Assembly (NCBI GenBank): GCA_002269645.1
Contig: NIVC01001771.1
Location: 124,001 to 188,000, forward strand
Reading direction: 5' to 3'
Length of the DNA stretch: 64,000 nucleotides
Source: Macrostomum lignano
Taxonomy: Eukaryota
Positions 1,012 to 63,679 of the stretch are shown here, one piece after another. Positions within the stretch are counted from its first letter, which is position 1. Each line of letters opens with the position of its first letter. Below the pieces are notes generated by a model, which made no database searches, was not told the DNA's origin, and worked only from the letters and a program-made list of their open reading frames with translations. The translations under genes and the position numbers were made by a program.

Positions 1012-2451
<1,440 letters not shown>

Positions 2452-3466: not shown

Positions 3467-3810
3467 GGGGGCCGTAGCCCAGCTGCTCTGGTGTGCCAGC
3501 AAACCAGGCTCGATTCCAAGTGCAGTCACATTAATTTGGGGCTGAATTATAGAATCTCGGCTTGGCTCTGCTCGTGCAATTAAAGGCCTTGAGCCAACCC
3601 CCCAAGGCGCAGTGAAGTGTACATGCCTAACGATAATATAAAGTTAGGGCCGCTGTACACTCCTGTGTGAGTGTGTGCCTGCGTACGTATCCGCGCGCTT
3701 GTATGCCTGCTCAGGGAGTCGGCGGAATGGGCAGTAATGCCTCTCGCCGGTTGTGCCTATGTCGCTTAAAGTGCGCCAGAGTGCACACAACCCCCTGCCT
3801 CTAATAAAAA
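3467..3810 (+). mobile_element. tRNA-derived SINE, copy 1
   Basis: Head GGGGGCCGTAGCCCAGC (A-box-like) and GGCTCGATTCC (B-box-like), with an A-rich tail ctctaataaaaa. Near-identical reverse-complement copies lie at 32311-32652 and 33982-34352. Confidence 0.85.
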
Positions 3811-5872: not shown

Positions 5873-10804
<4,932 letters not shown>

Positions 10805-15554: not shown

Positions 15555-16502
15555 CCCAGACAAAAACTTTTTAGTTACAAATTAAACAGACTGAGCCATT
15601 GTCCAACTGCGTCAATATGGGCTTGATGAAGGCCGCGCGGAGGAGTATAATATAGTCGCTAGCGGTCCCCGGCTTCAGCTGTGATGGCTAATTATATGCT
15701 ACGCGAAACAATATAATGTCTGCGTCGCTTAAATGCGGATCTGTCAAAATTAAAATAGCTGCAGCAATATTAGAAGAAATCCGGAGTCTTTCCAAACGGA
15801 TATGAGAAGTGCAGGGCATTTCTGGCGCAAATCCTCTCGGCTCTCCTTCACAGAACTTGCAGCATTTTTAGGTACTATGAGCTGGTATTTTCTAACTTGT
15901 GTCAATATAATGTTTTTTTCCTGTGTCAATGTAATAATAGGAAAATTGTTTACTGAAGTGCACCCCCGATCTCTATATGTGAATCTTTATGAACAGCTCT
16001 TTATTGTGCAGTTGTGCGGGCTTCACTTAGACTATAGAGGGAATATACTATATACCAGTACTTGCTATTGTTAAGCTCAAAAATAGATCCTTCGGTCACT
16101 CACTAGTCCACCTTAAAATTGTGTTGTGCATGAAAAACAAAAGACATACACAGCTTGGCCCTGCCTAAATTGAAGCCTTTCCCAATTCTGCTAAACCATT
16201 CTGATTCACGATTTGTGTCTCACACTGCTGCCTGTCTTCTTATATTATAAACACGCAGGGTACGAGAGGCGAGAGTCAGCGGAGCTCAGGGGCCGCGCGG
16301 AGAAGTTGCAGCTGACAAGAAGCCGCCTCGTGCCTACAGCTATTTAGTTAGTGTATAACCCCCAGCCACCCACCCCAACACGCAGGGCTAAACAATAACA
16401 GCGCAATAAGACTATATATACCTCTGACAAGCAGCCGCAAAACGGTCCTTTTAAAAAAACTCGCCTTTTCAAAGATTTTAAACACAAATTTTGTTACTAC
16501 TA

Positions 16503-16682
16503 ATGAAGTCTGTCCGATTCAGCAAGGAGGTGACGGTCTGGTACTTCTACAACGAGACCGCCTGTCAGAGGCGCCGGCGGTTGTCTTCAACTTCTCTGTC
16601 GCAGACGTTCGACCGGCTCTGGGCTGACATCGCCAAGTACCTGCGATCGAGTGACACTCCAGCCATTGCTGCAGTTCGGTGA
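16503..16682 (+). CDS. Small ORF, 59 aa, putative PP1-binding (RVxF) micropeptide
   Basis: MKSVRFSKEVTVWYFYNETACQRRRRLSSTSLSQTFDRLWADIAKYLRSSDTPAIAAVR. 22 of the first 25 codons after the ATG end in G/C despite AT-rich flanks. A TATATATA lies at 16413-16420. Confidence 0.55.
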   Translation: MKSVRFSKEVTVWYFYNETACQRRRRLSSTSLSQTFDRLWADIAKYLRSSDTPAIAAVR

Positions 16683-17264
16683 CTGCATCGAACAGAATCT
16701 GTCAATCAGTCAGCATCAAGCTGGTGGCAATAACTGTACATATCATAATTTCCTTTGTAAATATAAAATAATTGATTTAATTTTTGCACCTGTAAATTAT
16801 TCTTGCCAATCCATAACTGTATACAGTACATTGTATGTAAATTGTATAGCGGTCTAAATACACATTATTCTGCTCAAACATTGCACATCAATGCGATGCT
16901 AATGGGCTCAGTGATGATGCAATTATGTAATTAGCGGTAATACGATTGATTTGTTCAATCTGTATAAATTCTATTTTTACTGCCTTTGTTTTAACTTTCT
17001 TTTTAGAAAATGAAGAAACAAATCTGTAATTATTCTAGAATATAAACGAGAGGACAATTTCTTAGAAACATTTTGAAGGCCTATCAAAAATACCAAGCAC
17101 AACTGAAGTAGAAGGCAAGAACTACTGAAAAACTCAGGACGCATAACTGTTATGCTAAATATTTACAAACTTTTTATCATAGAGAATGCTTTCTGGGCGG
17201 GCCTTGAAAAAAATCCTACCAAGTTGAAGTTCCGCCTCCCGAGTTTACTTAGTAGTCCTTGGTA

Positions 17265-18544: not shown

Positions 18545-18872
18545 TTAATGAGTGAGTTCATGAGCAAGATCACTAGTGAGATCAAGAGTGAGATCAAGAG
18601 TGAGATCAAAAGTGAGATCAAGAGTGAGATCAAGAGTGAGATCAAGAGTGAGATCAAGAGTGAGATCAAGAGTGAGATCATAAGTGAGATCAAGAGTGAG
18701 ATCAAGAGTGAGATCAAGAGTGAGATCATAAGTGAGATCAAGAGTGAGATCAAGAGTGAGATCAAGAGTGAGATCAAGAGTGAGATCAAGAGTGAGATCA
18801 AGAGTGAGATCAAGAGTGAGATCAAGAGTGAGATCACTAGTGAGATCAAGAGTGAGATCAAGAGTGAGATCA
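18545..18872. repeat. 12-bp minisatellite (gagtgagatcaa)n in intron 18425-18886
   Basis: ~26 copies by direct inspection; the SEIK/LISL ORFs are artefacts. Confidence 0.97.
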
Positions 18873-18895: not shown

Positions 18896-21800
18896 TCAGT
18901 AGCCGGGCGGGACGCGCCTGGCCAACTTCTCGGCGAATCGCTTCAGCTCGGCCACGCCGGCCGCCTCGAGTTGCGAGCGCCGCTCGGCCTCGGCCTGAGC
19001 TTCGGCGGCCTCAGCGATGGCCGCCTCTCCGGTGAGCTCGTCGGCCATCTGCTCGGCACGGTCCTGATCCAGCGGCACGAACAGGCCCTTCACGCCCGCC
19101 ATGCGCACCAGGAACATCGTCAGCGGCTGCCGGCTCGGCGGCAGCGGCGGCGGCGGCGGAGGTGGCGGCGGTGGCGGCGGTGGCAGCATCGATGACAGGT
19201 CGGCGGTTTCGCTGAACTTTTCTCGCCCAGATCCGTCCTCCTCCTCCTCTTTCTCCTCGCCAGGGAAGTTGTCGTCCCTGACGGGCTCCTCGGCCCAGCC
19301 TTCAAAGAGACCGCCGGCGTCATTGTTGTCGTAGTCATCGACGTCGACGGCCGGTTCGGCCCGCTCCTCGGCGGCCGCCTCGGGATCGGCGCCGTCGCGA
19401 TCGTCGGCGGCCAGCCGGATGTTGCCTTCGGCGTCTTCGACGTAGCCGCCGACTGGCTGGCTGGCCAGCATGGCGGCCAGCTGCCGGTACTCCTCCGGGC
19501 TGAATTCGACCAGGTCGCGTTTTCGACGGCGCCGACGCGCGGCTGGCATGCCGGACTCCATGGCGCCGAGTAGCAGGCTGCGGCGCATGCGCAGCACGGC
19601 CGCTTTGGCCTCGGAGGGCGGCAGGGCGGCTCGCTTGCTGGCTGGCGGTGGGGCGACGGCGGAGCCTGGCCGGGCGGCGCCGATGGATGGGGAGAAACTT
19701 CGAGTTGAAGTTGGAGTCATTTCCAAGAATTCAAAATCATTTCCCAGAATTCAAAATCATTTCCCAGAATTCAAAATCATTTCCCAGAATTCAAAATCAT
19801 TTCCCAGAATTCAAAATCATTTCCCAGAATTCAAAATCATTTCCCAGAATTCAAAATCATTTCCCAGAATTCAAAATCATTTCCCAGAATTCAAAATCAT
19901 TTCCAAGAATTCAAAATCATTTCCAAGAATTCAAAATCATTTCCAAGAATTCAAAATCATTTCCCAGAATTCAAAATCATTTCCCGGAATTCAAAATCAT
20001 TTCCAAGAATTCAAAATCATTTCCCAGAATTCAAAATCATTTCCAAGAATTCAAAATCATTTCCCAGAATTCAAAATCATTTCACGGAATTCAAAATCAT
20101 TTCCCGGAATTCAAAATCATTTCCCAGAATTCAAAATCATTTCCCGGAATTCAAAATCATTTCCCGGAATTCAAAATCATATCCCGGAATTCAAAATCAT
20201 TTCCTGGAATTCCAAATAATTTCCTGGAATTCAAAATCATTTCCTGGAATTCAAAATCATTTCCCGGAATTAAAAATCATTTCCTGGAATTCAAAATCAT
20301 TTCCCGGAATTAAAAATCATTTCCCGGAATTCCAAATAATTTCCCGGAATTCAAAATCATTACTTGAATTTCAAATCGGTTCCAAAAGTTAAAAAAATAT
20401 TTTCCAGAGTTCAGAATAATTTTCCGGAGTTCAAAATCATTTTCAAGAACTTTAAAAAAAACCTTTCCAGAATTCGAAGTTTTAAATTAAAACAAAATCA
20501 CTTTTTAAAATTGAAGCTTTTTCATTGCAAAATATTTTCTCTTTGCCGAAATCACATGTCACAAGCAGCTACAAACCTGAACTAAATATCTTATATTATT
20601 CGGATATTATTTTGCATTTTGTTGGCCAAATAAGCACGATTTTCACAGATTTTCACAAACAGGTGCAATCGAGAATATTCGGCAATAATTATTGTCAAAT
20701 AATTATTAATCCACTCGATCGGGAAAGCACACCTGTGCGCAAGACTTTGGAAGGAAAATATTGCTTTCACACCTCATTAGCTTCTTTTTTGTTTCTACCC
20801 GGTGCACCTGCAGTCGTTGAGTATTTTTTAAATAAGAAATACAAATTGACCATCGCCCCACTGCCCGGCCACGCCTGACCAACCTGGCTAATGAAGGTCG
20901 GGGGGGGGGCTCTCTTTGCATTTTAACAAATCTCCTTTTTCCTAGAAATTTCTGTTCGGACAAATTTGACTTGGGAGAGTTGGAGAGGGAGAGGGAATCA
21001 GAGAGATTGGGTACTCAAAACTGTATATTGGGAAAATAATGAGCCAGACTAGAAAGGGAGACAGAGGGAGACAGAGAAGGAGACAGAGAGGGAGACAGAG
21101 AGGGAGACAGAGGGAGACAGAGAGGGAGACAGAGGGAGACAGAGGGAGACAGAGGGAGACAGAGAGGGAGACAGAGGGAGACAGAGGGAGACAGAGGGAG
21201 ACAGAGGGAGACAGAGAGAGAGAGAGACAGAGAGGGAGACAGAGGGAGACAGAGAGAGAGACAGAGAGGGAGACAGAGAGGGAGACAGAGAGGGAGACAG
21301 AGGGAGACAGAGAGGGAGACAGAGGGAGACAGAGAGGGAGACAGAGGGAGACAGAGGGAGACAGAGAGAGAGACAGAGAGGGAGACAGAGAGGGAGACAG
21401 AGAGGGAGACAGAGAGGGAGACAGAGAGGGAGACAGAGAGGGGGACAGAGAGGGAGACAGAGGGAGACAGAGGGAGACAGAGAGAGAGAGACAGAGAGGG
21501 AGACAGAGAGGGAGACAGAGAGGGAGACAGAGGGAGACAGAGGGGGACAGAGAAGGAGACATAGATGCAGGCAGAGCGATGCCCCAGCCGACATCAGCCC
21601 AGCCCCAGCCAGACAGGCATCTGCACGCAGTCTCAGCTCAACTTTCAAAGGGATTTCCACGGCCAAGCCGCTGTTCTATGAAAGGCGATATGTTGGAATC
21701 ACAGCCAGTCAGAATGCAGTGAAGCGAGCTTTGCAATTTACGTGACAGTCGAGCAGCTTTGAGCTACAAAAAACGTCAGGGTCGGATTGTCAAAATGCCG

Positions 21801-24800
21801 CATGATGAAAATGGCTTGTTTTGAAAAATCCTAACCTGCTCCTAGAGGCATTTGAGCAGGGTTTTTACTTTCAGTCAACTGAGAGAAGAGAAACCTGTTC
21901 AAGCGTGCAGCTGACTGGTTGCTACCCTGGTTAGGGATATTTCATTTTTATTGTCTAGAAAACTGACAAAGGGGTTTAGTTTCTGTACTTCCTGCACTTA
22001 TGCTCGGGAGAATCGCCTCAAAAAGATGAAGCATCTCTTTAAAAAATAATGTTCTTCATCTGCAGAATGGCACTGGCTCACTTTGCTTTTATAGAATGTC
22101 ACTCGTACAATGTATTACTCGTACAATGTCACTCTATTACAGAATGTCACTCTTTATTACAGAATGTCACTCTTTATTACAGAATGTCACTCTTTATTAC
22201 GGAATGTCACTCTTTATTAAGGAATGTCACTCTTTATTACAGAATGTCACTCTTTATTAAGGAATGTCACTCTTTATTACGGAATGTCACTCTTTATTAC
22301 GGAATGTCACTCTTTATAACAGAATGTCACTCTTTATTACGGAATGTCACTCTTTATTACGGAATGTCACTCTTTATAACAGAATGTCACTCTTTATTAC
22401 GGAATGTCACTCTTTATTACGGAATGTCACTCTTTATAACAGAATGTCACTCTTTATTACGGAATGTCACTCTTTATTACGGAATGTCACTCTTTATAAC
22501 AGAATGTCACTCTTTATTACGGAATGTCACTCTTTATTACGGAATGTCACTCTTTATAACAGAATGTCACTCTTTATTACGGAATGTCACTCTTTATAAC
22601 AGAATGTCACTCTTTATTACGGAATGTCACTCTTTATTACGGAATGTCACTCTTTATAACAGAATGTCACTCTTTATTAAGGAATATCACTCTTTATAAC
22701 AGAATGTCACTCTTTATTACGGAATGTCACTCTTTATTACGGAATGTCACTCTTTATTACGGAATGTCACTCTTTATAACAGAATGTCACTCTTTATTAC
22801 GGAATGTCACTCTTTATTACGGAATGTCACTCTTTATTACGGAATGTCACTCTTTATTACGGAATGTCACTCTTTATTACGGAATGTCACTCTTTAATAC
22901 AAAATGTCACTCTTTATTACAAAATATCACTCTTTATTACAAAATGTCACTCTTTATTACAAATTGTCACACTCTCACTCCACTAATACTAAACCAACAG
23001 AAAATCTTACTAAGCCAGACAAGAGGAGTTCTGCATCTTCATCTGTCACAATTGCACACATTTCTCTCCCAGCATCTCTTCCCAACTCAGGCCAGACACA
23101 TTAGGTATAGGGGGGGGGGTGCACAAATGCAAATATGCGGCAACACTGGAGCAGATGGGCAGCCCTGGATGAAAAAAGATGCCCCATCAAATTCACCGCC
23201 ATCTGGAGCTCGATCACGGCTTTTCCGACAGCCCCTCAGTTTTCCCGACTTCATGAATCCCCCACATTTTGCGCTCCCGGAATTCTTCTGCAGTTGTCAA
23301 AAATTAAAAGGATTTGGGCTGAATTCCCTCCATACTTTGGGTGTTAGAACTCCGCGGCTACATCCTGCAGTTCACCTCTCCAGTTTCTGTCTCTAGAACT
23401 CCGCGGCTACATCCTGCAGTTCACCTCTCCAGTTTCTGTCTCTAGAACTCCGTGGCTACATCCTGCAGTTCACCTCTCCAGTTTCTGTCTCTAGAACTCC
23501 GCGGCTACATCCTGCAGTTCACCTCTCCAGTTTCTGTCTCTAGAACTCCGTGGCTTAATCCCGCAGTTCACCTCTCCAGTTTCTGTCTCTAGAACTCCGC
23601 GGCTACATCCTGCAGTTCACCTCTCCAGTTTCTGTCTCTAGAACTCCATGGCTTAATCCTGCAGTTCACCTCTCCAGTTTCTGTCTCTAGAACTCCATGG
23701 CTTAATCCCGCACTTCACCTCTCCAGTTTCTGTCTCTAGAACTCCGTGGCTTAATCCCGCACTTCACCTCTCCAGTTTCTGTCTCTAAGCACTCCATGGC
23801 TTAAGCTTAAGCATCAATCAGCTCTGCAATGAGAAAGAGGAAACAGGAAGGAGATGGGACAGGCCAGGAACAGGAAGCCCACGACGCTCAACTCAGGATT
23901 TCAGTGGCATCCAGGCAGTGGGGAGCGATGGATTGAAAGGGAAGAGAGAAGTGGGAGCAAAGCAGAGTAGCAAACAGGATTGGGGATGATCCGAAATGGC
24001 CAGTTTCGGTCCCTTTCCACATTTGACACAGCGATTTCATCTTTGTGTACAAGCTCCTGCCTTTAAGTACATTTGATTTTACACTTATTAATATGCGTCC
24101 ACAGCCCAATATTCTGTACTATTTATCGTAAACTGGTCGGCACACAAAAAGACAGATCGTTAGACATGAATTTTGCCCTGGATACTCAGATTTGAGCAAC
24201 TCCTCTGCCTATGTATTCCTACGTATGGATGTCTCACTCCCACTCTCCGAGACTCTCACCCCCAGACTCCCACTCTCCGAGATTCTCACCCCCAGACTCC
24301 CACTCTCCGAGACTCTCACCCCAGACTCCCACTCTCCGAGATTCTCAACCTCCAGACTCCCACTCTCCGAGACTCTCACCCTCCAGACTCCCACTCTCCG
24401 AGACTCTCACCCCCAGACTCCCACTCTCCGAGACTCTCACCCCAGAATCCCACTCTCCCAGAATCCCACTCTCCCAGACTCTCACTTTCCCAGACTCTCA
24501 TTCTCCCAGACTCTCACTCTCCGAGACTCTCACTCTCCCAGACTCCCGATCTCCCAGATTCCCGATCTCCCAGACTCTCACTCTCCCAGGCTCCCGATCT
24601 CCCAGACTCCCGCTCTTCCAGACTGCCCCTCTCCCAGACTGCCCCTCTCCCAGACTGCCGCTCTTCCAGACTGCCACTCTCTCAGACTCTCACCCCAGAC
24701 TGCCGCTCTCCCAGACTGCCGCTCTCCCAGACTGCCACTCTCCCAGACTGCCGCTCTCCCAGACTGCCGCTCTCTCAGACTCTCACCCAGACTGCCCCTC

Positions 24801-27800
24801 TCCCAGACTGCCCCTCTCCCAGACTGCCGCTCTCCCAGACTCCCGATCTCCCAGACTCCCGATCTCCCAGACTCCCAATCTCCCAGACTGCCCCTCTCCC
24901 AGACTGCCGCTCTCTCAGACTCTCACCCAGACTGCCCCTCTCCCAGACTGCCCCTCTCCCAGACTGCCCCTCTCCCAGACTGCCGCTCTTCCAGACTGCC
25001 ACTCTCTCAGACTCTCACCCCAGACTGCCGCTCTCCCAGACTGCCGCTCTCCTAGACTGCCACTCTCCCAGACTGCCGCTCTCTCAGACTCTCACCCCAG
25101 ACTGCCGCTCTCCCAGACTGCCGCTCTCCCAGACTGCCCCTCTCCCAGACTGCCCCGCTCCCAGACTGCCCCTCTCCCAGACTGCCGCTCTCTCAGACTC
25201 TCACCCAGACTGCCCCTCTCCCAGACTGCCCCTCTCCCAGACTGCCCCTCTCCCAGACTGCCGCTCTTCCAGACTGCCACTCTCTCAGACTCTCACCCCA
25301 GACTGCCGCTCTCCCAGACTGCCGCTCTCCTAGACTGCCACTCTCCCAGACTGCCGCTCTCCCAGACTGCCGCTCTCTCAGACTCTCACCCCAGACTGCC
25401 GCTCTCCCAGACTGCCGCTCTCCCAGACTGCCCCTCTCCCAGACTGCCCCGCTCCCAGACTGCCGCTCTTCCAGACTGCCACTCTCTCAGACTCTCACCC
25501 CAGACTGCCGCTCTCCCAGACTGCCGCTCTCCTAGACTGCCACTCTCCCAGACTGACGCTCTCCCAGACTGCCGCTCTCTCAGACTCTCACCCAGACTGC
25601 CCCTCTCCCAGACTGCCCCTCTCCCAGACTGCCGCTCTCCCAGACTGCCGCTCTCCCAGACTGCCGCTCTCCCAGACTGCCCCTCTCCCAGACTGCCACT
25701 CTCTCAGACTCTCACCCCAGACTGCCGCTCTCCCAGACTGCCGCTCTCCTAGACTGCCACTCTCCCAGACTGCCGCTCTCCCAGACTGCCGCTCTCCCAG
25801 ACTGCCGCTCTCCCAGACTGCCGCTCTCTCAGACTCTCACCCCAGACTGCCGCTCTCCCAGACTGCCCCTCTCCCAGACTGCCGCTCTCCCAGACTGCCC
25901 CTCTCCCAGACTGCCGCTCTCCCAGACTGCCCCTCTCCCAGACTGCCACTCTCCCAGACTGCCGCTCTTCCAGACTGCCACTCTCTCAGACTCTCACCCC
26001 AGACTGCCGCTCTCCCAGACTGCCGCTCTCCTAGACTGCCACTCTCCCAGACTGCCGCTCTCCCAGACTGCCGCTCTCTCAGACTCTCACCCAGACTGCC
26101 CCTCTCCCAGACTGCCCCTCTCCCAGACTGCCGCTCTCCCAGACTGCCGCTCTCCCAGACTGCCGCTCTCCCAGACTGCCCCTCTCCCAGACTGCCACTC
26201 TCCCAGACTGCCCCTCTCCCAGACTGCCGCTCTCCCAGACTGCCGCTCTCTCAGACTCTCACCCCAGACTGCCGCTCTCCCAGACTGCCGCTCTCCCAGA
26301 CTGCCGCTCTCCCAGACTGCCGCTCTCCCAGACTGCCGCTCTCCCAGACTGCCCCTCTCCCAGACTCCCGATCTCCCAGACTCCCGCTCTCCCAAAACAT
26401 GAACCCCTGAACGCTTACCCGGCATGGCCCGGACTTCGTCCTTCATCTGGCTGAAAGTCCGCTTAACGCTCGCCTTGCCCAGACGGAGAGTCAGAGACTT
26501 CCTCTCGGCCTCTGTCATGGACTCCAGCAGGTGGTGGAACATCTCCTTCAGGTCCTGACGGCTTGGCCCAGTCTCGTATCGCTCCTTAGGCTGCTGCTGC
26601 TGCTTGGCGTGCTGCATTGCCGCTTCGTGGTGCTTTGCCAGCTCCTGCTTTTCATCCCGGTTCTGCTGTGCAGTCTTGCTTCCAGAAGCCTTCGCCGCTG
26701 CAGCCGCGGCCGCCGCAGCCTTGAGCTGCTGCTCGCCAGACAGCTCGGGCTTTGATAGGCTGGACTCCAGCTCATCCTCCAGACTGCCTGCGCATTCATG
26801 TTAGCGATCGGAGCAGATGTCAGTTTGTGATGTACTTTTAATTTTATTCGTGAAGTGTATTGGGTTACCCCAGCCCATCATCATAGTTTCTATAGTTCAT
26901 GCGAGGGTTCAGTAAGGTTTTATTTTTAAAAAGCTATGCTCATAAGTCATTAATTTGCTGGGAGAAGAAAATGAGCAGTGCGACATGATCAATGAGCAGT
27001 GTGACATGATCAATGAGCAGTTTGACATGATCAATGAGCAGTGTGACATGATCAATGAGCAATTTGACATGATCAATGAGCAGTGTGACATGATCAATGA
27101 GCAATTTGACATGATCAATGAGCAGTGTGACATGATTAATGAGCAATTTGACATGATCAATGAGCAGTGTGACATGATTAATGAGCAATTTGACATGATC
27201 AATCAATGAGCAGTGAGTCATGATCAATCAATGAGCAGTGAGCCATGATCAATAAATCAATGAGCAGTGAGTCATGATCAATCAATGATCAGTGAGTCAT
27301 GATCAATCAATGAGCAGTGAGTCATGATCAATCAATGAGCAGTGAGTCATGATCAATCAATGAGCAGTGAGTCATGATCAATCAATGATCAATGATCAAA
27401 GCAGACCAGAGCAGAAACCCTGCATGTCCTGATTTTTAAGTCAACAACGATCTCATCAACTGAAGATACCCGCATTTAACTTATTTCAAGGCTTCCTCGG
27501 TGTTCCCTCACGAACCGCTAAATGCTGGTACTACGAGCGGGAGGCGCGGTAATGCTTTTGGCGAAACCTCAAAGAGAACTAATTAGCTCGGAGCGAAGCG
27601 CTATCGACCGCCCGCCCCCTCTTCAGATTCAGACAAAGCAGGCAATTTAGAAGTGCAAACGGCTGCCTTCCACCGTAAACATTACTTTCCTGTCCTTGTT
27701 TGGGGAGGAAAATTTTCCTCACTGAACTAATTAAGAAAACTTCTCTGTGAAAAGCGCAGCCTGGTAACGAGGGGATAAAAATTATAGGTACAGTATTTAC

Positions 27801-28581
27801 ATTATTACGAGTACTTGCGGGTTTAGTCTATGAAAATTCTAATAAAACTGGGGCTACACTTTTTTCAACTCACTTAAGTAAGCCCATTCCCTGTCCCCAC
27901 CCCTGTCCCCACCCCTGTCCCCACACCTGTCCCCACCCCTGTCCCCACACCTGTCCCCACCCCTGTCCCCACCCCTGTCCCAAACCTGTCCCCACACCTG
28001 TCCCCACCACTGTCCCCACCACTGTCCCCACCCCTGTCCCACCCCTGTCCCCACCCCTGTCCCCACACCTGTCCCCACCCCTATCCCCACCCTTGCACCC
28101 CCTATGCCCAACCCTATCCTCACCCCTGTCCACATCCCTGTCCCCACCCCTGTCCCACCCCTGTCCCCACCCCTGTCCCCACCCCTGTCCCCACCCCTGT
28201 CCCCACCCCTGTCCCACCCCTGTCCCCACCCTTTCCCTGTCCCACCCCTGTCCCCACCCCTGTCCCCACCCCTGTCCCCACCCCTGTCCCCACCCCTGTC
28301 CCCACCCCTGTCCCCACCCCTGTCCCCACCCCTGTCCCCACCCCTGTCCCCACCCCTGTCCCCACCCCTGTCCCCACCCCTGTCCCCACCCCTGTCCCCA
28401 CCCCTGTCCCCACCCCTGTCCCCACCCCTGTCCCCACCCCTGTCCCCACCCCTGTCCCCACCCCTGTCCCCACCCCTGTCAAAACCCCTGTCCCCACCCC
28501 CAACTCACTGGACCGGTCAGCCTGGACCAGCAGCAGGGCAGCGGCCAGGACCGTCAGAGACAGACAGCCGGCGAGTTGCAT
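18896..28581 (-). CDS. Unknown secreted precursor-like protein, ~403 aa; exons 28509-28581, 26419-26787, 18896-19665
   Basis: Exon 1 encodes the signal-peptide-like [24 protein letters not shown] with a phase-1 GTGAGT donor. Exon 2 (369 nt) is phase 1-1 with gcgcag / GTAAGC sites. Exon 3 enters at phase 1 (cggccag|GC; least certain site). The total is 1212 nt, in frame, with GC-rich codons. Confidence 0.65.
19716..20362. repeat. 20-bp minisatellite (tttcccagaattcaaaatca)n
   Basis: ~32 copies, degenerating at the right end. Confidence 0.97.
21053..21560. repeat. GA-rich 10/12-bp repeat (gagggagaca / gagagggagaca)
   Basis: Direct inspection. Confidence 0.95.
22088..22965. repeat. 20-bp minisatellite (gaatgtcactctttattacg)n
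   Basis: ~43 copies; a ttataaca variant recurs every third unit in the middle. Confidence 0.97.
23345..23790. repeat. 49-bp minisatellite
   Basis: tagaactccgcggctacatcctgcagttcacctctccagtttctgtctc restarts at 23345, 23394 and onward; ~9 copies. Confidence 0.97.
24232..26395. repeat. 16-bp C-rich minisatellite (cccagactgccgctct)n with interspersed ctctcagactctcacc variants
   Basis: ~2.1-kb array ending ~25 nt from the donor at 26418. Confidence 0.97.
26965..27395. repeat. Compound 21-bp then 25-bp minisatellite
   Basis: aatgagcagtgtgacatgatc repeats to ~27200, then aatcaatgagcagtgagtcatgatc. Confidence 0.95.
27889..28500. repeat. 12-bp minisatellite (cccctgtcccca)n
   Basis: ~50 copies, abutting the donor at 28508. 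Confidence 0.97.
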
Positions 28582-32134: not shown

Positions 32135-32895
32135 TATAAGCCTGAAGCTTCCTAAACCCGAAATTCTATAAGCCGGAAGCTTCCTAAACCCGAAATTCTA
32201 TAAGCCTGAAGCTTCCTAAACCCGAAATTCTACAAGCCGGAAGCTTCCTAAACCCGAAATTCTACAAGCCTGAAGCTTCCTAAACCCGAAATTCTACAAG
32301 CCGGAAGCTTTTTATTAGAGGCAGGGGGGTTGTGTGCACCCTGGCGCACTTTAAGCGACATCACAACCGGCGAGAGGCATTACTGCCCATTCCGCCGACT
32401 CCCCTGAGCAGGCATACAAGCGCGCGGATACGTACGCAGGCACACACTCACACAGGAGTGTACAGCGGCCCTAACTTTATATTATCGTTAGGCATGTACA
32501 CTTCACTGCGCCTTGGGGGTTGGCTCTCAAGGCCTTTAATTGCACGAGCAGAGCCAAGCCGAGATTCCAATTCAGCCCCAAATTAATGTGACTGCACTTG
32601 GAATCGAGCCTGGGTCGCTGGCACACCAGAGCAGCTGCGCTACCGCCCCCCTAAGCCGGAAGCTTCCTAAACCCGAAATTCTATAAGCCTGAGGTTTCCT
32701 AAACCCGAAATTCTATAAGCCGGAAGCTTCCTAAACCCGAAATTCTATAAGCCGGAAGCTTCCTAAACCCGAAATTCTACAAGCCGGAAGCTTCCTAAAC
32801 CCGAAATTCTATAAGCCGGAAGCTTCCTAAACCCGAAATTCTATAAGCCGGAAGCTTCCTAAACCCGAAATTCTACAAGCTGGAAGCTTCCTAAC
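32135..32895. repeat. 32-bp minisatellite interrupted by a SINE
   Basis: aagccggaagcttcctaaacccgaaattctat occurs on both sides of 32311-32652. Confidence 0.95.
32311..32652 (-). mobile_element. tRNA-derived SINE, copy 2, with 13-bp TSD
   Basis: Reverse complement of 3467-3810; TSD aagccggaagctt at 32298-32310 and 32653-32665. Confidence 0.9.
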
Positions 32896-33981: not shown

Positions 33982-34352
33982 TTTTTATTTTTTATTATAG
34001 AGGCAGGGGGGTTGTGTGCACCCTGGCGCACTTTAAGCGACATAGGCACACAACCGGCGAGAGGCATTACTGCCCATTCCGCCGACTCCCCTGAGCAGGT
34101 ACACAAGCGCACGGATACGTACGCAGGCACACACTCACACAGGAGTGTACAGCGGCCCTAGCTGTATTTATCGTTAGGCATGTACACTTCACTGCGCCTT
34201 GGGGGGTTGGCTCTCAAGGCCGTTAATTGCACGAGCAGAGCCAAGCCGAGATTCCAATTCAGCCCCAAATTAATGTGACTGCACTTGGAATCGAGCCTGG
34301 GTCGCTGGCACACCAGAGCCTGCGCTAGACCGCTGGTCTAAGGACCCCCTCA
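33982..34352 (-). mobile_element. tRNA-derived SINE, copy 3, with 11-bp TSD
   Basis: Same body as copies 1 and 2, with a longer A-rich tail. TSD gggttatggtt at 33971-33981 and 34353-34363. Confidence 0.9.
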
Positions 34353-34687: not shown

Positions 34688-36100
34688 ATGCCACCAGGCC
34701 AGTCCAGCCCGAAACCGGCCAGCGCGGACGCCGCCCTACTCAGCGACGAGGTGAACGAATGGCGACTGGTCGACTCGGAGGAGGACGAGGACACAGCCAG
34801 CGCCTCCTCCGAACGACTCCCCGAGCAGCAGCCGCCGCTGCAGTCGGACAGCAACGCGGGCAACAGCGACCCGCCGGAGACGGTGGCCGGCCTGTTCAGC
34901 CGGCTGCACAATGCCGGACTCCAGCAGCGCTGCCTGCCGTCTGACTTCACCGTCCAGCTGATTGCTGGCGCACTGGCCACGGCCAAGTCCGTGCTGCTGG
35001 CCGAGCCCAACTGCCTGCAGCTGGCCGGCCCCATCGTGATGTTCGGAGATCTGCACGGCGAATTCCACTCGCTAGTGAAGCTGATCGAAGTGCTGGGCCG
35101 GCCGCCCGCTCGATCGTACTTGTTCCTCGGCGATTATGTCGACCGGGGACCGCTGTCGCTGGAGACTGTGCTCTACTTGCTGCTGCTCAAGGCGCTGCAC
35201 CCCCGCCACGTGTTTGTGCTGCGCGGCAACCACGAGGACCGGCGGATCTATCGGTACTTCAACTTCGAGGACGAGCTCATCGCTACATTCGGCCTGACAG
35301 CCGGGCAGAACCTCAGCAACTACTTCAACGAGACCTTCTGCTACTTGCCCGTGTGCGCGGTGGTCAACGGCGAGATCTTCTGCTGCCACGGCGGCCTGTC
35401 GCCATACTTCAACCATCCGCGCTTCGCCGCGTCCCAGGCCGAGCTGGTCAGGCGGATCAACGAGCCATCGAAGCCGCTGCACTTTCGCAAGTCCGATTTC
35501 ATCGCCGACCTGTTGTGGTCGGACGCGCTGGACATTGTGGCCGAGATGCCCAGCCCGGCCGTCTATCCAAGCACCGCGGAGGAGTGGATCGAGCAGCGGA
35601 ACGCAGTCAGCGACGCCCTGGGCACCATGCGGCCGACGGTGGCCACCTCCGCCGTGCCGACTGTCTCGCCGTCGCTCCGCCTATCGCAGATGCCGATGCT
35701 GGAGAGCGCGTCGAACGCCGACGGCCAGCAGGGCGTAGTCGAATGGATGCCGAACCCTCGCGGCTGCTCGTACGTCTTCACCAAGGCCGCCTGCTTCAAT
35801 TTCCTGCGCCGGCACCGCCTGAACTGGCTGATCCGTGCGCACATGTTCGTCATGAACGGCTGCAAGTTCAGCTTCGAAGGCCGCTGCGTCACGCTGTTCT
35901 CGGCGGCCGACTACGCGCAGCGCTACCGCAACACTGGCGCGGTGCTGCACATCCCCGGCAGCGCCTCGGACGGCACCAAATTCCCGGGCAGGACGCTGCG
36001 CTTCTGCAAGAAGAATCTGCTGCAGTGCGACAGCCGCTTGCCGGAAAACCCAGCCGATTGGCCGGAGGAAATTGCGGTCAAAAAGTCGCTGATCAGATAA
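34688..36100 (+). CDS. Intronless divergent PPP-family Ser/Thr phosphatase, PP1-like, 470 aa
   Basis: Motifs GDLHG, GDYVDRG, RGNHE, CHGG, LLWSD, NPRG, RAH and TLFSA..Y appear in PP1 order. GC-rich codons; AATAAA at 36155. Confidence 0.93.
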   Translation: MPPGQSSPKPASADAALLSDEVNEWRLVDSEEDEDTASASSERLPEQQPPLQSDSNAGNSDPPETVAGLFSRLHNAGLQQRCLPSDFTVQLIAGALATAKSVLLAEPNCLQLAGPIVMFGDLHGEFHSLVKLIEVLGRPPARSYLFLGDYVDRGPLSLETVLYLLLLKALHPRHVFVLRGNHEDRRIYRYFNFEDELIATFGLTAGQNLSNYFNETFCYLPVCAVVNGEIFCCHGGLSPYFNHPRFAASQAELVRRINEPSKPLHFRKSDFIADLLWSDALDIVAEMPSPAVYPSTAEEWIEQRNAVSDALGTMRPTVATSAVPTVSPSLRLSQMPMLESASNADGQQGVVEWMPNPRGCSYVFTKAACFNFLRRHRLNWLIRAHMFVMNGCKFSFEGRCVTLFSAADYAQRYRNTGAVLHIPGSASDGTKFPGRTLRFCKKNLLQCDSRLPENPADWPEEIAVKKSLIR

Positions 36101-36665: not shown

Positions 36666-37193
36666 AACCGAGCGTCCTTCATTTTTCAATCCAAATGAAC
36701 TCACAGCTAATAATACGAATTTAATGTCAATCAAAGCTCAACTGCACTAGCTATGAGCCTTGCAATACGATACCCAGAGGATTAAAAGATCAAAAGATTA
36801 AAATCGACCCTGGGAAATCATTTGAAAGAAACTGGTGTCACTTGCATCAGTACATCATTATAAATTATCGAGACTTGCGCAGACGCCTGCTTCTGTTCCT
36901 TTGCTGATGGAGATGCAGCCAGCCAGCCGCTGTCAGATCCAGTTGGATATTCGATACTGACACCAGGCTGCCCGGCAATCAGGAATCAGTTCTAATAAGG
37001 AATTGCATTGCCCTTCGCATTGGTCCTCCCCCCCCCCGCGGTGCACCTCGAGAAGCCCGGGAGGGCCAATAGACGGGCCGCGCATTCGGGCTGAACAAAG
37101 CTAGAAAGCGATAAATACATGTAGCTAACAGCTAGCGGCGGTCTCTCATGCAGACTCTTTGAAATCCCATCGGCAAAAACAATTCCTAGAAAG

Positions 37194-39521
37194 ATGCAGA
37201 AGCACCTCGCCCAGGCTCTGACAGCTGGAATTATCGCCGCCAAGATTCTCATCATGGCGGTGGGGCTGCTGGGCAACCTGCTTGTGATACTCGTGATCGT
37301 GAACACTAGGCGGCTTCACACCAGGGTGTACGCGCTGCTGGTGAACCTGGCCGCTGCCGACCTCCTCTCCCTGCTGATCTGCGTGCCGCACAGCATCCTG
37401 CAGGAGTTCAAGGAGGTCTACAAGCCCGACCTGCTGTGTGAGTGCTTGCTCAGTGCAACTCCAAAAGCATTAACAATCTTAAATCAATTATCAACCACAT
37501 GCTTTAACAACGAAACTTTGAATCCCACATCATAAATACCAGTCCCAACTCCGAAATCTCGAATCCCAACTCCAGAGTAACCAACTAACTCTGAAATCCT
37601 GAATTGAAAGCCTCAAATCTGAAATCCCAAACCCGAAACCTGAATCGCAAATCCCAAATCCAAAACACCAAATCTCAAATTCCAAACCCCAAATCCCAAA
37701 TCCCAAATCCCAAATCCCAAATCCCAAATCCCAAATCCCAAATCCCAAATCCCAAATCCCAAATCCCAAATCCCAAATCCCAAATCCCAAATCCCAAATC
37801 CCAAATCCCAAATCCCAAATCCCAAATCCCAAATCCCAAATCCCAAATCCCAAATCCCAACTCCCAAACCCATACCCCAAATCCAAATCCAAAACCCCTA
37901 ATCTCAAATTCCAAACCACAAATCCCAAATCCCAAATCCCAAACCTCAAATCCCAAATCCGAACCCCAAAATCTCAAATCCCAAATCCAATATCTAAATC
38001 CTAAATCCCCAATCCCAAATCTCACATCCCAAATCCCAAACCCTAAACCCCAAATCCCGAATCGTAAACGGCAAGTCTCAACAATAAGAAGCCAGAAGAA
38101 ATCCAGTCTCAGGCATCCCAACCCACAATCCCAAATCCATACCCCAAATTGAAATCCAAAACACCAATCTCACATCCCAAATCCCAAACCCCAAATCCCA
38201 AATCCCAACCCCAAAATCTCAAATCCCAAATCCAATATCTAAATCCTAAATCCCAAATCCCAAATCTCACATCCCAAATCCCAAACCCTAAACCCCAAAT
38301 CCCGAATCGTAAACGGCAAGTCCCAAAAATAAGAAGCCAGAAGAAATCCAGTCTCAGGCATCCCAACCCTCCTTGAAACAACAAACCGCAGGCCAGCTGG
38401 CTTACGGATTTGAGCACCTGTTTACCATGGCCTCCAGCCTGACCATCGCCGTGATCGCCCTAGAGCGCCTGGTGGTGATCTGGATGCCGCTGCGCGGTCC
38501 CACCCTGCTGGGCCGGGCCAGCCTCCGAGCTGCCGTCATGCTGGGCCTCTGGCTGCTGTCGCTGCTGGTCACGCTGCCGTTCTTCATCCGCGCCAACGCC
38601 AAGCACCTGCCGATCCCAGACAGAGCGGCAGGCAATTCCAGCTCCGGAGCTGGCCGCTGGTCGCACGTGTGCGGCATGCCGCAGTCGCCGGTGAATCCCA
38701 ACGCCACGGATGAGGACAAGCGGCTGGTGAGCATCCTCGGCCTGCCGCCGGAGACCTTCTACATTATTAACACCTGCCTGGAGCTGTACCTGCCCATGCA
38801 GCTCATCGTGCTGCTCTACTCCGCCATCTTCTACAAACTTCTCCGCTCATTCCGTCGCCTGGGAGGCGAGGAGGCTGAGGACAAGCCTCATCGCAGGCAT
38901 CGGCAGCAGCGGCATCATCATTTCCGACAGGAGGAGGAGATCCAACTGCAGGACCGGCGGCCTCAGCGGCCTCAGCAGCCGCCGAGAACAACCTGCCGAG
39001 TGAACAGCGGCGCCCTCATCGAACGGAAACGGGTGGTGTACTTCAGCCTGATGGTGGCCATCGTGTACTTTCTCGCCGTGGCGCCGTACCGCAGTCTGGC
39101 CCTGTGCCTGGCGCACAGGAGCTGCTTTCACAGCCTGCTGGCTGGGCTGGGGCAGGCCGGTCTGTACGTCACCGCGCAATGCCTGTCAATTTTGCTGTAC
39201 GCCAACCACTGCCTGAACCCGGTGCTGTACAACCTGGCCTCCCGCCGATTCCGCCGGGCCACCGGCCACCTCCTGCGTCGCTGCTGCGCTGTCGGCGGCG
39301 GCGATGCTCGAGGCGTCGGCAGAGGCGGTGTCGGCGGAGGCGGCGGAGGCGGCGGCGCATTGGCTAACAGGGGACGGCTTGGCGGCGCCGGCGGGGCCGC
39401 CTGCGGCGGAATCGGCAACGGCTGCGGCGACGGCGCCGGGATGGAGACGCGGACGCTGAGGGCGACAACTCGACGGACGAAGTTCAAATCCAGAAGCAAC
39501 AACTGCGAGCTGCAGGTGTAA
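37194..39521 (+). CDS. Class A peptide-type GPCR (GHSR/TRH/ETH-receptor-like features), ~457 aa; exons 37194-37437 and 38392-39521
   Basis: TM1 GNLLV, TM2 NLAAADLL, TM3 ALERL, TM7 NHCLNPVLYN and helix 8 SRRFR. The phase-1 join T|GC creates the conserved TM3 Cys. The N-terminus may extend upstream through an acceptor near 37150. Confidence 0.9.
37600..38370. repeat. (cccaaat)n 7-bp array plus a duplicated degenerate block filling the GPCR intron
   Basis: Pure array at ~37690-37860; the block near 37960-38125 is repeated near 38215-38370. Confidence 0.95.
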
Positions 39522-58751: not shown

Positions 58752-58808
<57 letters not shown>

Positions 58809-58875
58809 CAATCAGTCAGCTAGCCAATCAATAAATCACTCAATCAATAAATCAATCAATCAATCAATCAGCTAG

Positions 58876-58908
<33 letters not shown>

Positions 58909-59007
58909 CAAACAATCAATCAGCTAGCTAATCAATAAATCACTAAATCAATCAATCAATCAATCAATCAAACAAACAATCAATCAGCTAGCTAATCAAT
59001 AAATCAC

Positions 59008-59048
<41 letters not shown>

Positions 59049-59187
59049 CAATCAGCTAGCCAATCAATCAATCAATCAATCAATCAAACAAACAATCAAT
59101 CAGCTAGCTAATCAATAAATCACTCAATCAATCAATCAATCAATCAATCAAACAAACAATCAATCAGCTAGCTAATCAATAAATCAC

Positions 59188-59230
<43 letters not shown>

Positions 59231-59250
59231 GCTAGCCAATCAATCAATCA
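57750..59250. repeat. 20-bp (taatcaatcaatcagctatt)n grading into (AATC)n
   Basis: Direct inspection. Confidence 0.96.
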
Positions 59251-59251
59251 C

Positions 59252-63569
<4,318 letters not shown>

Positions 63570-63679
63570 TAGCCGCTCCTTGAAATCGTTATAAGTATAG
63601 AGGCTTCTTTTGTTTGGATATGAGCTGCTTAGATATGAACTGAGTAGAGGGAGCAAATCAAAGACTATTCATAGGATAG

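What the first reader, a model, noticed from the sequence alone, without database searches (positions are those of the whole stretch)
16503..16682. 59-aa small ORF with a GADD34-like PP1 docking motif and an Inhibitor-1-like basic phosphosite
Seen: KSVRFSKEVTVWYF at the N-terminus, RRRRLSS at residues 23-29, and an amphipathic FDRLWADIAKYL. Codons are strongly GC3-biased (22 of the first 25) in AT-rich surroundings, and a TATA-like motif lies ~85 nt upstream. Known: PPP1R15A/GADD34 binds PP1 via RKVRFSEKVTVHFL (RVxF plus a downstream hydrophobic pair), and viral mimics (ICP34.5, DP71L) are similarly short. Inhibitor-1 pairs KIQF with RRRRPT, 23 residues from F to T; here F6 to S28 is 22. The GADD34 eIF2alpha-binding RxGxW motif is absent. 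Inference: an unannotated, possibly PKA-switched PP1 regulatory micropeptide that gene finders would miss.
Basis: partly seen in the sequence, partly recalled or inferred. Interest (0 to 1): 0.8.

Follow-up and report, generated by a model that had tools for sequence, protein, structure and literature searches.

The report
Orphan flatworm micro-gene with PP1-docking motifs
A 59-codon reading frame in the flatworm Macrostomum lignano is real, looks protein-coding and is already annotated. Its first 26 residues resemble the strings that dock proteins onto protein phosphatase 1, but it has no relatives anywhere, so that function remains an untested guess.

Summary

**Source and annotation.** The window is Macrostomum lignano assembly Mlig_3_7, contig NIVC01001771.1. 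The exact 59-aa product is already a deposited protein (NCBI, nr, UniRef). It comes from an RNA-seq-guided, TransDecoder-filtered annotation, so "unannotated" is wrong.

**Coding signals.**
- Codon usage fits M. lignano genes only in this frame.
- A GC-rich block coincides with the ORF.
- No ATG lies upstream in the leader.
- The locus is not repeated within the window.

**Homology.** The ORF is an orphan: two very large protein searches, Pfam and PDB gave no homolog. It is not a member of PPP1R15/GADD34 (PF10488) or Inhibitor-1/DARPP-32 (PF05395). Control fragments of the same size hit those models strongly.

**What remains.**
- a strict RVxF (KSVRF);
- aromatic residues at +7 and +9;
- an Arg cluster at the spacing of the PP1 "Arg site" in spinophilin, PNUTS and PPP1R15B;
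- RRRRLS at Inhibitor-1-like spacing;
- an amphipathic helix.

**Verdict.** The motif reading is plausible and testable, but conservation, translation and binding could not be tested. I estimate about 0.35 that it is a PP1-interacting micropeptide and about 0.35 that it is a functionless ORF. Interest is modest.

The parts
16413..16420 (+). TATA-like element (TATATATA), a putative core promoter 83-90 nt upstream of the ATG
   Evidence: (pattern scan). Its function is inferred only. No transcription start data are available here.
16421..16502 (+). AT-rich leader. It has no upstream ATG. An in-frame TAA at 16479-16481 makes the ATG at 16503 the only possible start in this frame. An AG at 16473-16474 after a pyrimidine run could be a (trans-)splice acceptor.
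   Evidence: 27% GC at 16440-16499. The acceptor role is speculative.
16503..16682 (+). Single-exon coding sequence of 59 codons plus TGA. The product is a basic protein of 7.0 kDa, pI 10.3.
   Evidence: Annotated gene with exactly this product. Codon log-likelihood is +0.25 bits per codon in this frame and at most 0.02 in the other five. The GC block coincides with the ORF.
16506..16520 (+). K2-S3-V4-R5-F6, an RVxF-type PP1 docking motif. It fits both the loose pattern [KR]x0-1[VI]{P}[FW] and a stricter one.
   Evidence: Motif definition quoted from PMC10731240.
16539..16550 (+). W13-Y14-F15-Y16, an aromatic PhiPhi-x-Phi block. W13 is at F6+7 and F15 at F6+9, the offsets of PPP1R15B Y650 and I652 from F643.
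   Evidence: Spacings from PMC4394352. Inference by threading, not a structural test.
16569..16580 (+). R23-R26 arginine cluster. It lies 9-10 residues after the PhiPhi anchor (W13 or Y14), as the Arg-site residue does in spinophilin (F459 to R469) and PNUTS (F411 to R420). It is also the basic part of a basophilic kinase site.
   Evidence: PMC4394352 and PMC10731240. Inference.
16584..16589 (+). S28-S29, candidate phosphoacceptors in RRRRLSS (RRxS and RxRxxS consensus). They lie 22 and 23 residues after F6. In Inhibitor-1, F12 to T35 is 23 residues.
   Evidence: Phosphorylation itself is not testable here.
16608..16643 (+). F36-L47 (FDRLWADIAKYL), the core of an amphipathic helix
   Evidence: Hydrophobic moment 0.72-0.75. 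The single-sequence AlphaFold2 model predicts a helix at 32-48, at low confidence with mean pLDDT 64.
16760..16772 (+). Cluster of poly(A)-signal-like hexamers (AATATA, TATAAA, AATAAT) about 80 nt after the stop. No canonical AATAAA lies within 800 nt.
   Evidence: Function inferred only.

Best explanation
**What it is.** This is a real, already annotated, lineage-restricted single-exon micro-gene of the flatworm Macrostomum lignano. It encodes a basic 59-residue protein. It is not a homolog of GADD34/PPP1R15 or of Inhibitor-1.

**How it most likely works.** If it is translated, its exposed N-terminal 26 residues would dock on the catalytic subunit of protein phosphatase 1, as spinophilin, PNUTS and PPP1R15 do:
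- V4 and F6 would sit in the RVxF pocket.
- W13/Y14 and F15/Y16 would sit in the PhiPhi site.
- One arginine of R23-R26 would sit in the Arg site.

This would place S28/S29, a basophilic-kinase site, close to the bound phosphatase. The serines could be a phosphorylation switch or simply a substrate of the bound enzyme. The C-terminal amphipathic helix (about residues 34-49) would stay free to bind a partner.

**Shown.** The ORF, its annotation, its coding-like statistics, its orphan status, the motif matches and their spacings.

**Inferred.** Translation, PP1 binding, phosphorylation and any effect on phosphatase activity. The resemblance is most economically read as convergent short-linear-motif evolution, or as chance.
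For: **Gene status**
- The exact product is a called gene on NIVC01001771.1 of GCA_002269645.1 and is held by NCBI, nr and UniRef.
- That assembly is M. lignano Mlig_3_7.
- Its GenBank annotation derives from genome-guided RNA-seq transcripts with TransDecoder coding calls. Non-coding and repeat-overlapping transcripts were removed (PMC5730564).

**Coding signals independent of the motif**
- Codon usage trained on 2,224 codons of genes in the same window scores +0.25 bits per codon in the ORF frame. The other five frames score at most 0.02.
- The ORF ranks 3rd or 4th of 58 small ORFs, depending on the background used. Two of those above it overlap reading frames with receptor-like sequence and are probably GPCR exons, though they were not scanned. 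The third lies in a GC-rich repeat region.
- GC3 is 0.73, like local genes at 0.69-0.88.
- The GC block starts and ends with the ORF.
- There is no upstream ATG, and an in-frame stop lies 24 nt upstream.
- The locus is single copy in the window and outside all repeat families.

**Motif**
- The 14-residue match to the PP1-binding segment of PPP1R15A has 7 identities and 11 positives. That segment was verified against PDB 7NZM and 4XPN.
- The spacings F+7, F+9 and Arg at PhiPhi+9/10 match those read from the PP1 complexes of PPP1R15B, spinophilin and PNUTS (PMC4394352; PMC10731240).
- The composite string is rare in random peptides, 3e-4. The Inhibitor-1-like pair is rarer, 4e-5.
Against: - No homolog exists in 5.8 billion clustered proteins or by HMMER against 1.84 billion representatives. 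The only other hit is a repeat-protein artefact.
- The paralogous contig NIVC01001331.1 carries annotated copies of two genes that lie 2 kb and 18 kb downstream of the ORF, a 403-aa gene and a 470-aa phosphatase. No annotated copy of this ORF exists anywhere.
- There is no Pfam or PDB sequence match.
- Loose versions of the motifs are common. RVxF occurs in 55 of 680 ORF segments of this window, and the composite string in 3 of 680, one inside a receptor-like (7tm_1) reading frame.
- All patterns were defined after the fact.
- The RVxF starts at residue 2, so the usual N-terminal basic flank is missing.
- The single-sequence AlphaFold2 model puts residues 8-30 in a helix rather than an extended chain, though at pLDDT 64.
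- The start context has C at -3, and there is no canonical AATAAA.
- Serine rather than threonine at the putative switch site argues against Inhibitor-1-type inhibition (from memory of the DARPP-32 and Inhibitor-1 literature, not checked here).
Confidence: 0.35

Rival explanations
1. The ORF is a functionless or very young reading frame on a transcribed but essentially non-coding locus. TransDecoder called it because it happens to be GC3-rich, and the PP1-like motifs are coincidence picked out after the fact.
For: - It is an orphan in every search.
- It is only 59 codons, and 121 ATG-ORFs of that size or longer occur in the window.
- Only one annotated copy exists, although two downstream genes (2 kb and 18 kb away) are annotated on both paralogous contigs.
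- A GC-rich block without an ORF lies just upstream, so GC-rich patches are not always coding.
- Total codon evidence is only about 15 bits.
- The start context is weak and there is no canonical poly(A) signal.
- Loose PP1 motifs are frequent in random ORFs.
Against: - The codon score is positive only in the ORF's own frame, and the ORF ranks beside two probable exons.
- GC content rises and falls at the ORF boundaries.
- The ATG is the first one after the TATA-like element.
- The joint occurrence of a strict RVxF, PhiPhi, Arg at the right spacing and RRRRxS is expected in fewer than 1 in 10,000 random 59-mers.
Confidence: 0.35
2. The ORF encodes a real small basic protein whose function has nothing to do with PP1. 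Examples would be a nucleic-acid- or membrane-associated protein, or a reproduction-related orphan protein. KSVRF...VTVWYF would be just a hydrophobic strand, and RRRRLSS an ordinary basic or kinase site.
For: - The coding-like statistics and the annotation apply as above.
- The protein has pI 10.3, an Arg cluster, a Ser/Thr-rich linker and a strongly amphipathic helix.
- RVxF-type patterns have low specificity.
- M. lignano is reported to have many fast-evolving, lineage-specific genes related to reproduction (PMC7336406 title and abstract).
Against: The N-terminal string matches three separate PP1 contact sites at the spacings seen in solved complexes. It shares 7 of 14 residues with the experimentally defined PPP1R15A docking segment. 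Accessible strict RVxF motifs usually do bind PP1 in vitro (general knowledge, not tested here).
Confidence: 0.22
3. The ORF is a diverged or truncated true homolog of PPP1R15 (an eIF2-alpha phosphatase subunit, like the short viral DP71L), or of Inhibitor-1/DARPP-32.
For: - A 14-residue similarity to the PPP1R15A core.
- A size similar to the 71-residue DP71L chain (PDB 9NB9).
- An Inhibitor-1-like order of RVxF and RRRRx[ST].
Against: - PF10488 and PF05395 do not match it at E<=10. Control fragments of equal size score 37-145 bits.
- There is no alignment to PPP1R15B at all.
- The conserved RxGxW and ARDRxRF elements are absent.
- No intermediate sequences turned up in two exhaustive searches.
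Confidence: 0.04

Closest known systems
PPP1R15A/GADD34 and PPP1R15B/CReP PP1-binding core (Pfam PF10488), with the short viral versions DP71L and ICP34.5
   Same: - An RVxF followed six residues later by a hydrophobic or aromatic pair: VRFSEKVTVHF in PPP1R15A against VRFSKEVTVWY here, with 7 of 14 identical.
- An arginine further on that could use the PP1 Arg site.
- A small overall size comparable to DP71L.
- A downstream amphipathic helix.
   Different: - There is no detectable homology beyond 14 residues.
- It lacks the RxGxW element and the ARDRxRFxxRI helix that confer eIF2-alpha and G-actin dependence (PMC4394352).
- It is a stand-alone ORF with the motif at residue 2, not the terminal exon of a long protein.
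Inhibitor-1 (PPP1R1A) and DARPP-32 (Pfam PF05395)
   Same: An RVxF near the N-terminus, followed by RRRR-x-[ST] with almost the same spacing (22 or 23 residues against 23). A short, heat-stable-inhibitor-like basic region.
   Different: - No Pfam match, whereas control N-terminal fragments score 88 and 125 bits.
- The site is Leu-Ser instead of Pro-Thr.
- It has a PhiPhi block that Inhibitor-1 lacks.
- Inhibitor-1 and DARPP-32 are, to my knowledge, vertebrate families.
Spinophilin and PNUTS type RVxF-PhiPhi-(F)-Arg docking string. This is a class of convergent short linear motifs, not a homologous family.
   Same: The order and spacing of RVxF, PhiPhi, a third aromatic and Arg. The candidate has F6, W13/Y14, F15/Y16 and R23/R24. 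Spinophilin has F451, F459, T461 and R469. PNUTS has W401, F411, F413 and R420.
   Different: Those strings lie inside large scaffold proteins with substrate-recruiting domains. Here the string makes up nearly half of a 59-residue protein. Binding is untested.
CSRNP1-3 N-terminal region (Pfam PF16019)
   Same: An RVxF followed by [VI]TVxYF: RVAFDGITVFYF against SVRFSKEVTVWYF.
   Different: The shared stretch is only six residues, with one residue more between the motifs.

Membership tests
PPP1R15 / GADD34 (PF10488) | RVxF motif followed by a PhiPhi pair in the conserved core | tested here: met
   KSVRF then W13-Y14 at F+7/+8. BLASTP aligns residues 2-15 with RKVRFSEKVTVHFL.
PPP1R15 / GADD34 (PF10488) | Arg-site arginine followed four residues later by the conserved Trp (RxGxW), then the ARDRxRFxxRI region needed for substrate-specific activity | tested here: not met
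   Arginines are present, but no GxW and no ARDRxRF (against the verified core sequences). The importance of these residues is described in PMC4394352.
PPP1R15 / GADD34 (PF10488) | Match to the family profile | tested here: not met
   No PF10488 hit at E<=10. The 68-aa PPP1R15A and 62-aa PPP1R15B cores score 36.7 and 145.3 bits.
PPP1R15 / GADD34 (PF10488) | Promotes eIF2-alpha dephosphorylation | not testable with these tools
   Needs a cell or biochemical assay.
Inhibitor-1 / DARPP-32 (PF05395) | N-terminal KIQF-type RVxF, plus RRRRPT about 23 residues after the Phe | tested here: inconclusive
   KSVRF plus RRRRLS(S) at 22 or 23 residues. The pattern is met, but with Leu-Ser instead of Pro-Thr.
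Inhibitor-1 / DARPP-32 (PF05395) | Match to the family profile | tested here: not met
   No PF05395 hit at E<=10.
Inhibitor-1 / DARPP-32 (PF05395) | PKA phosphorylation converts it into a nanomolar PP1 inhibitor | not testable with these tools
   Needs kinase and phosphatase assays.
RVxF-PhiPhi-Arg PP1 docking string (motif class) | [KR]-x0-1-[VI]-{P}-[FW] | tested here: met
   K2-S3-V4-R5-F6. Definition from PMC10731240.
RVxF-PhiPhi-Arg PP1 docking string (motif class) | Hydrophobic or aromatic pair 7-10 residues after the RVxF Phe, with a further hydrophobic residue two positions on | tested here: met
   W13 (+7), Y14 (+8), F15 (+9), Y16 (+10). Compare PPP1R15B Y650 (+7) and I652 (+9), and spinophilin F459 (+8) and T461 (+10).
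RVxF-PhiPhi-Arg PP1 docking string (motif class) | Arginine 8-10 residues after the PhiPhi anchor | tested here: met
   R23 is W13+10 or Y14+9. Known values are 8 (PPP1R15B), 9 (PNUTS) and 10 (spinophilin).
RVxF-PhiPhi-Arg PP1 docking string (motif class) | The motif lies in an accessible, intrinsically disordered segment | tested here: inconclusive
   In the single-sequence AlphaFold2 model, residues 1-7 are coil and 8-30 are helix, at mean pLDDT 64.
RVxF-PhiPhi-Arg PP1 docking string (motif class) | Binding to PP1 that is lost on mutating the Val and Phe | not testable with these tools
CSRNP N-terminal region (PF16019) | Match to the family profile | tested here: not met
   No hit. Only VTVWYF/ITVFYF is shared.

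The most novel reading that the evidence does not exclude
A 59-residue micropeptide, arisen independently in a flatworm lineage, that combines a PPP1R15/spinophilin-type RVxF-PhiPhi-Arg docking string with an Inhibitor-1-type basophilic phosphosite. It would act as a kinase-switched inhibitor or specifier of PP1. That would be a convergent, minimal reinvention of two vertebrate regulatory principles in a single micro-gene.
Probability: 0.07. Interest if true: 0.6.

Novelty: new member of a known kind. Interest (0 to 1): 0.3.

Why it matters
If the peptide is made and binds PP1, it would be one of the smallest cellular PP1 regulators. It would also be a clean example of docking motifs arising by convergence in an orphan gene, in a flatworm model where transgenesis is established (PMC5730564).

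It would not open a new principle. PP1 is already known to be steered by hundreds of proteins through these same motifs.

If the ORF is not translated, the case is a useful caution. Even a multi-part motif match in a coding-looking ORF is not evidence of function.

Tried and rejected
1. **Homology.**
   - The word-indexed search of 5.8 billion proteins found only the protein itself.
   - HMMER against 1.84 billion representatives added only a bacterial-type repeat protein. It matched through four copies of QQTFDQL and was rejected as an artefact.
   - PDB sequences gave nothing at E<=10.
   - Pfam gave only a sub-threshold FabD_helical_ins hit, 16 bits against a cut-off of 27. I rejected it.
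2. **RNA genes.** Rfam and tRNA scans of the window found nothing.
3. **Repeats.** The ORF region is in no direct or inverted repeat family and is unique in the window.
4. **Alternative start.** The 63-aa TTG-start version is not on record anywhere.
5. **Paralogous copy.**
   - A duplicated region exists on contig NIVC01001331.1, but the tools fetch at most 10 kb around a gene. The expected position of the ORF copy lies about 7 kb beyond the fetched locus.
   - I tried to use the neighbouring 403-aa gene as an anchor. This failed because its exact product is not returned by the protein searches.
   - I also could not reconstruct that product. Splice-site enumeration gave 150-500 equally plausible models.
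   - Even if reached, the test would have low power. The two copies differ at only about 1.7% of synonymous sites in the phosphatase gene.
6. **Structure.** The single-sequence AlphaFold2 model has low confidence (pLDDT 64), so it was not used for a fold search.
8. **Functional link to the PP1-like phosphatase 18 kb downstream.** I considered this and set it aside. That enzyme's RVxF-groove residues are substantially changed, and another gene lies between the two.

Full report
**1. The observation**

The + strand carries an ATG at 16503 that opens a 59-codon frame ending with TGA at 16680-16682. The product is MKSVRFSKEVTVWYFYNETACQRRRRLSSTSLSQTFDRLWADIAKYLRSSDTPAIAAVR.

- KSVRFSKEVTVWYF is residues 2-15, RRRRLSS is residues 23-29, and FDRLWADIAKYL is residues 36-47.
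- 22 of the first 25 codons end in G or C.
- A TATA-like element lies 90 nt upstream.
- A GT sits at the stop codon.

An in-frame TAA at 16479-16481, with no AG between it and the ATG, means the protein cannot start earlier in this frame. The RVxF-like motif is therefore truly at the extreme N-terminus.

**2. Where the window comes from, and whether the ORF is annotated**

An exact-sequence look-up finds the 59-aa product as a called gene on NCBI contig NIVC01001771.1 (239 kb) of assembly GCA_002269645.1. The same sequence is held by NCBI, nr and UniRef. Papers citing that accession identify it as the Mlig_3_7 assembly of the free-living flatworm Macrostomum lignano.

The assembly paper describes the deposited annotation. 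It is built from genome-guided RNA-seq transcripts (StringTie/TACO plus the TBONE boundary pipeline). Coding potential comes from TransDecoder. [quoted passage not shown]

Two things follow. And an assembled transcript very probably exists at this locus. That second point is an inference from the pipeline, because I could not see the reads.

**3. Is it coding?**

An ORF of this length is not remarkable in itself. The window has 121 ATG-initiated ORFs of at least 59 aa. Three lines of evidence independent of the motif point to coding.

- **Codon usage.** I built a codon table from 2,224 codons of genes recognised in the same window: calmodulin, a zinc-finger gene, the neighbouring 403-aa gene, a PP1-like phosphatase and several GPCR exons. 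The ORF scores +0.25 bits per codon in its own frame and at most 0.02 in the other five. It ranks 3rd or 4th among 58 comparable small ORFs, depending on the background used. Two of those above it overlap reading frames with receptor-like sequence and are probably GPCR exons, though I did not scan them. The third lies in a GC-rich repeat region.
- **GC3.** It is 0.73, inside the range of local genes, 0.69-0.88.
- **GC profile.** GC content is 27% just before the ATG, 50-63% across the ORF, and 17-32% after it.

There is no upstream ATG between the TATA-like element and the start. The ORF region is single copy in the window and belongs to no repeat family.

Several points count against coding:
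- The total codon evidence is only about 15 bits.
- A GC-rich block without an ORF lies just upstream, at 16230-16410.
- The start context has C at -3.
- No canonical AATAAA follows the stop, only variant hexamers at 16760-16772.

**4. Relatives**

None were found.
- The word-indexed search of 5.8 billion clustered proteins returned only the protein itself.
- HMMER against 1.84 billion representatives added one hit at E = 8e-4. It is a repeat protein matched through four copies of QQTFDQL, which I regard as spurious.
- PDB sequences gave nothing at E<=10.
- Pfam gave nothing meaningful.

A duplicated region of the genome does exist. The PP1-like gene 18 kb downstream is encoded identically on contig NIVC01001331.1, and a 403-aa gene lies upstream of it on both contigs. 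That locus is colinear with the window from about position 23,800 onward. Yet the 59-aa protein has only one annotated copy.

I could not fetch the paralogous position itself (see the tried-and-rejected field). The two copies are also so similar that a dN/dS test on 180 nt would have little power. The phosphatase gene shows 6 synonymous and 0 non-synonymous differences in 1,413 nt, and its flanks are 96-98% identical.

**5. The motif resemblance, tested rather than recalled**

The PPP1R15A core sequence I used was confirmed against PDB chains 7NZM_C and 4XPN_B. The PPP1R15B and DP71L sequences were read from the alignments of the same search.

*Family membership*
- BLASTP of the ORF product against the PPP1R15A core aligns only residues 2-15: 7 of 14 identical, 11 of 14 positive, 18.9 bits.
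- Against the PPP1R15B core there is no alignment at all.
- The PPP1R15A and PPP1R15B core fragments (68 and 62 aa) hit PF10488 at 36.7 and 145 bits.
- The ORF product hits neither model, even at E<=10.

It is therefore not a detectable member of either family. The conserved RxGxW and ARDRxRF elements of PPP1R15 are absent.

*Motif level*

In the PP1-PPP1R15B crystal structures the contacts are:
- V641 and F643 in the RVxF pocket;
- Y650 (F+7) and I652 (F+9) at the PhiPhi site, equivalent to spinophilin F459/T461 and PNUTS F411/F413;
- R658 in the Arg site, equivalent to spinophilin R469 and PNUTS R420 (PMC4394352; PMC10731240).

The ORF product has V4 and F6, W13 (F+7), F15 (F+9), and R23/R24 at 9-10 residues after the PhiPhi anchor. 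The known spacings are 8, 9 and 10. Residues 2-26 can thus be threaded along the same path on PP1. CSRNP1, another PP1 partner, has a similar RVAFDGITVFYF. Recurrence in unrelated proteins fits convergent motif evolution.

*How much is chance?*

I simulated 2 million random 59-mers with local amino-acid composition, and used the window's own 680 six-frame ORF segments (61,643 residues) as a second control.

| Pattern | Random 59-mers | Window ORF segments |
|---|---|---|
| Loose RVxF | 5.2% | 55 of 680 |
| Strict RVxF | not simulated | 7 of 680 |
| RVxF plus PhiPhi | 1.0% | 11 of 680 |
| RVxF-PhiPhi-x-Phi-Arg string | 3e-4 | 3 of 680 |
| RRRRx[ST] | 2e-4 | not counted |
| Inhibitor-1-like pair | 4e-5 | 1 of 680 (this ORF) |
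| VRFS..VTV | 0 of 2 million | not counted |

One of the three window segments matching the full string lies inside a receptor-like (7tm_1) reading frame. My analytic estimate for VRFS..VTV is about 1e-7 per ORF.

These figures say the full combination is unlikely for a random ORF. But the patterns were chosen after seeing the sequence, and a genome holds millions of ORFs, so chance is not excluded.

**6. Structure**

The segment 34-49 has a high helical hydrophobic moment, 0.72-0.75. A single-sequence AlphaFold2 model gives helices at 8-30 and 32-48 at mean pLDDT 64. That is too weak to say whether the docking string is disordered when free. Complex prediction with PP1 was not possible with the tools allowed.

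**7. Most likely mechanism, and rivals**

My best reading is that this is an expressed orphan micro-gene whose product docks on PP1 through an RVxF-PhiPhi-Arg string. That places the basophilic site S28/S29 next to the bound phosphatase and leaves an amphipathic helix for a partner. I put about 0.6 on the peptide being made and about 0.6 on PP1 binding given that, so about 0.35 overall.

An Inhibitor-1-like, kinase-switched inhibition is a further step that I rate lower, about 0.07 overall. One reason is that the site is Leu-Ser rather than Pro-Thr.

The rivals are:
- a functionless ORF on a transcribed locus, about 0.35;
- a real small basic protein with an unrelated role, about 0.22;
- true divergent homology to PPP1R15 or Inhibitor-1, about 0.04.

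**8. Comparison with the known, and novelty**

In predicted mechanism the closest things are the PP1 docking strings of spinophilin, PNUTS and PPP1R15, and the Inhibitor-1/DARPP-32 module. It is a member of none of those families. If real, it would be a new member of the broad and well-known class of RVxF-type PP1-interacting proteins, notable mainly for its size and orphan origin. Interest is modest (0.3), because the hypothesis is cheap to test but rests on motifs only.

Noticed in passing
window 34688-36100 (+): An uninterrupted ORF encodes a 470-aa divergent PP1-like PPP phosphatase. Its best PDB matches are Ppz1 and PP1 at E about 1e-50 to 1e-53. The catalytic motifs GDLHG, GDYVDRG, RGNHE, HGG and RAH are kept. 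It has an insertion of about 65 residues after LLWSD. Several RVxF-groove positions are changed, by my reading of the HMMER alignment with PP1 numbering supplied from memory: D240R, D242N, L243W, R261G, C291F, F293K. It lies 18 kb from the candidate, with another gene in between, so I assume no functional link.
   Followed up: partly
L002/L004 (NIVC01001331.1) against window 23800-46000: A paralogous (duplicated) copy of this genomic region exists in the same assembly. The PP1-like gene is identical in protein, with 6 synonymous and 0 non-synonymous differences in 1,413 nt. Unique flanks are 96-98% identical, and minisatellite arrays differ in length. The upstream 403-aa gene is annotated on both copies, but the 59-aa ORF is annotated on only one.
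   Followed up: partly
window 18896-28581 (-): An annotated 403-aa multi-exon gene converges on the candidate, with its stop 2.2 kb downstream of the ORF. A near-identical UniRef entry from the older assembly is named 'Ribosome biogenesis protein NOP53', but Pfam finds no domain in the one exon tested. Its introns are filled with minisatellites. I could not reconstruct its exact exon structure.
   Followed up: partly
whole window, e.g. 18550-18872, 19717-20442, 24235-26394, 53418-55673, 57749-59255: About one third of the window (21.4 kb of 64 kb) consists of 35 separate minisatellite or microsatellite arrays, with units of 4-79 nt and up to about 150 copies. These arrays create many long spurious ORFs on both strands.
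   Followed up: partly
window 7520-8478: A short mariner-like remnant. An ORF with a Mos1-type HTH_48 domain (7864-8244, +) lies between 132-nt inverted repeats (7520-7651 and 8347-8478, 92% complementary).
   Followed up: no
window 3467-3795, 32362-32650, 34007-34319: A dispersed repeat of about 330 nt is present in three copies. The second and third are inverted relative to the first, at 94-100% identity. One copy lies just upstream of the PP1-like gene.
   Followed up: no
window 1012-1542 (-), 5876-6400 (-), 37125-39518 (+), 51973-52809 (-), 59255-59635 (-), 61342-62139 (-), 63216-63668 (-): Other genes in the window. There is a calmodulin exon (four EF-hands) and a C2H2 zinc-finger exon. 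Four ORFs match rhodopsin-type GPCRs in Pfam (two in 37125-39518, plus 51973-52809 and 61342-62139). Two further receptor-like ORFs, 59255-59635 and 63216-63668, were not scanned.
   Followed up: partly
window 16230-16410 (+): A GC-rich block (52-65% GC) without an ORF lies 100-270 nt upstream of the candidate's start. It contains the direct repeat ACACGCAGGG at about 16250 and about 16378. It could be promoter sequence or an untranslated upstream exon.
   Followed up: no
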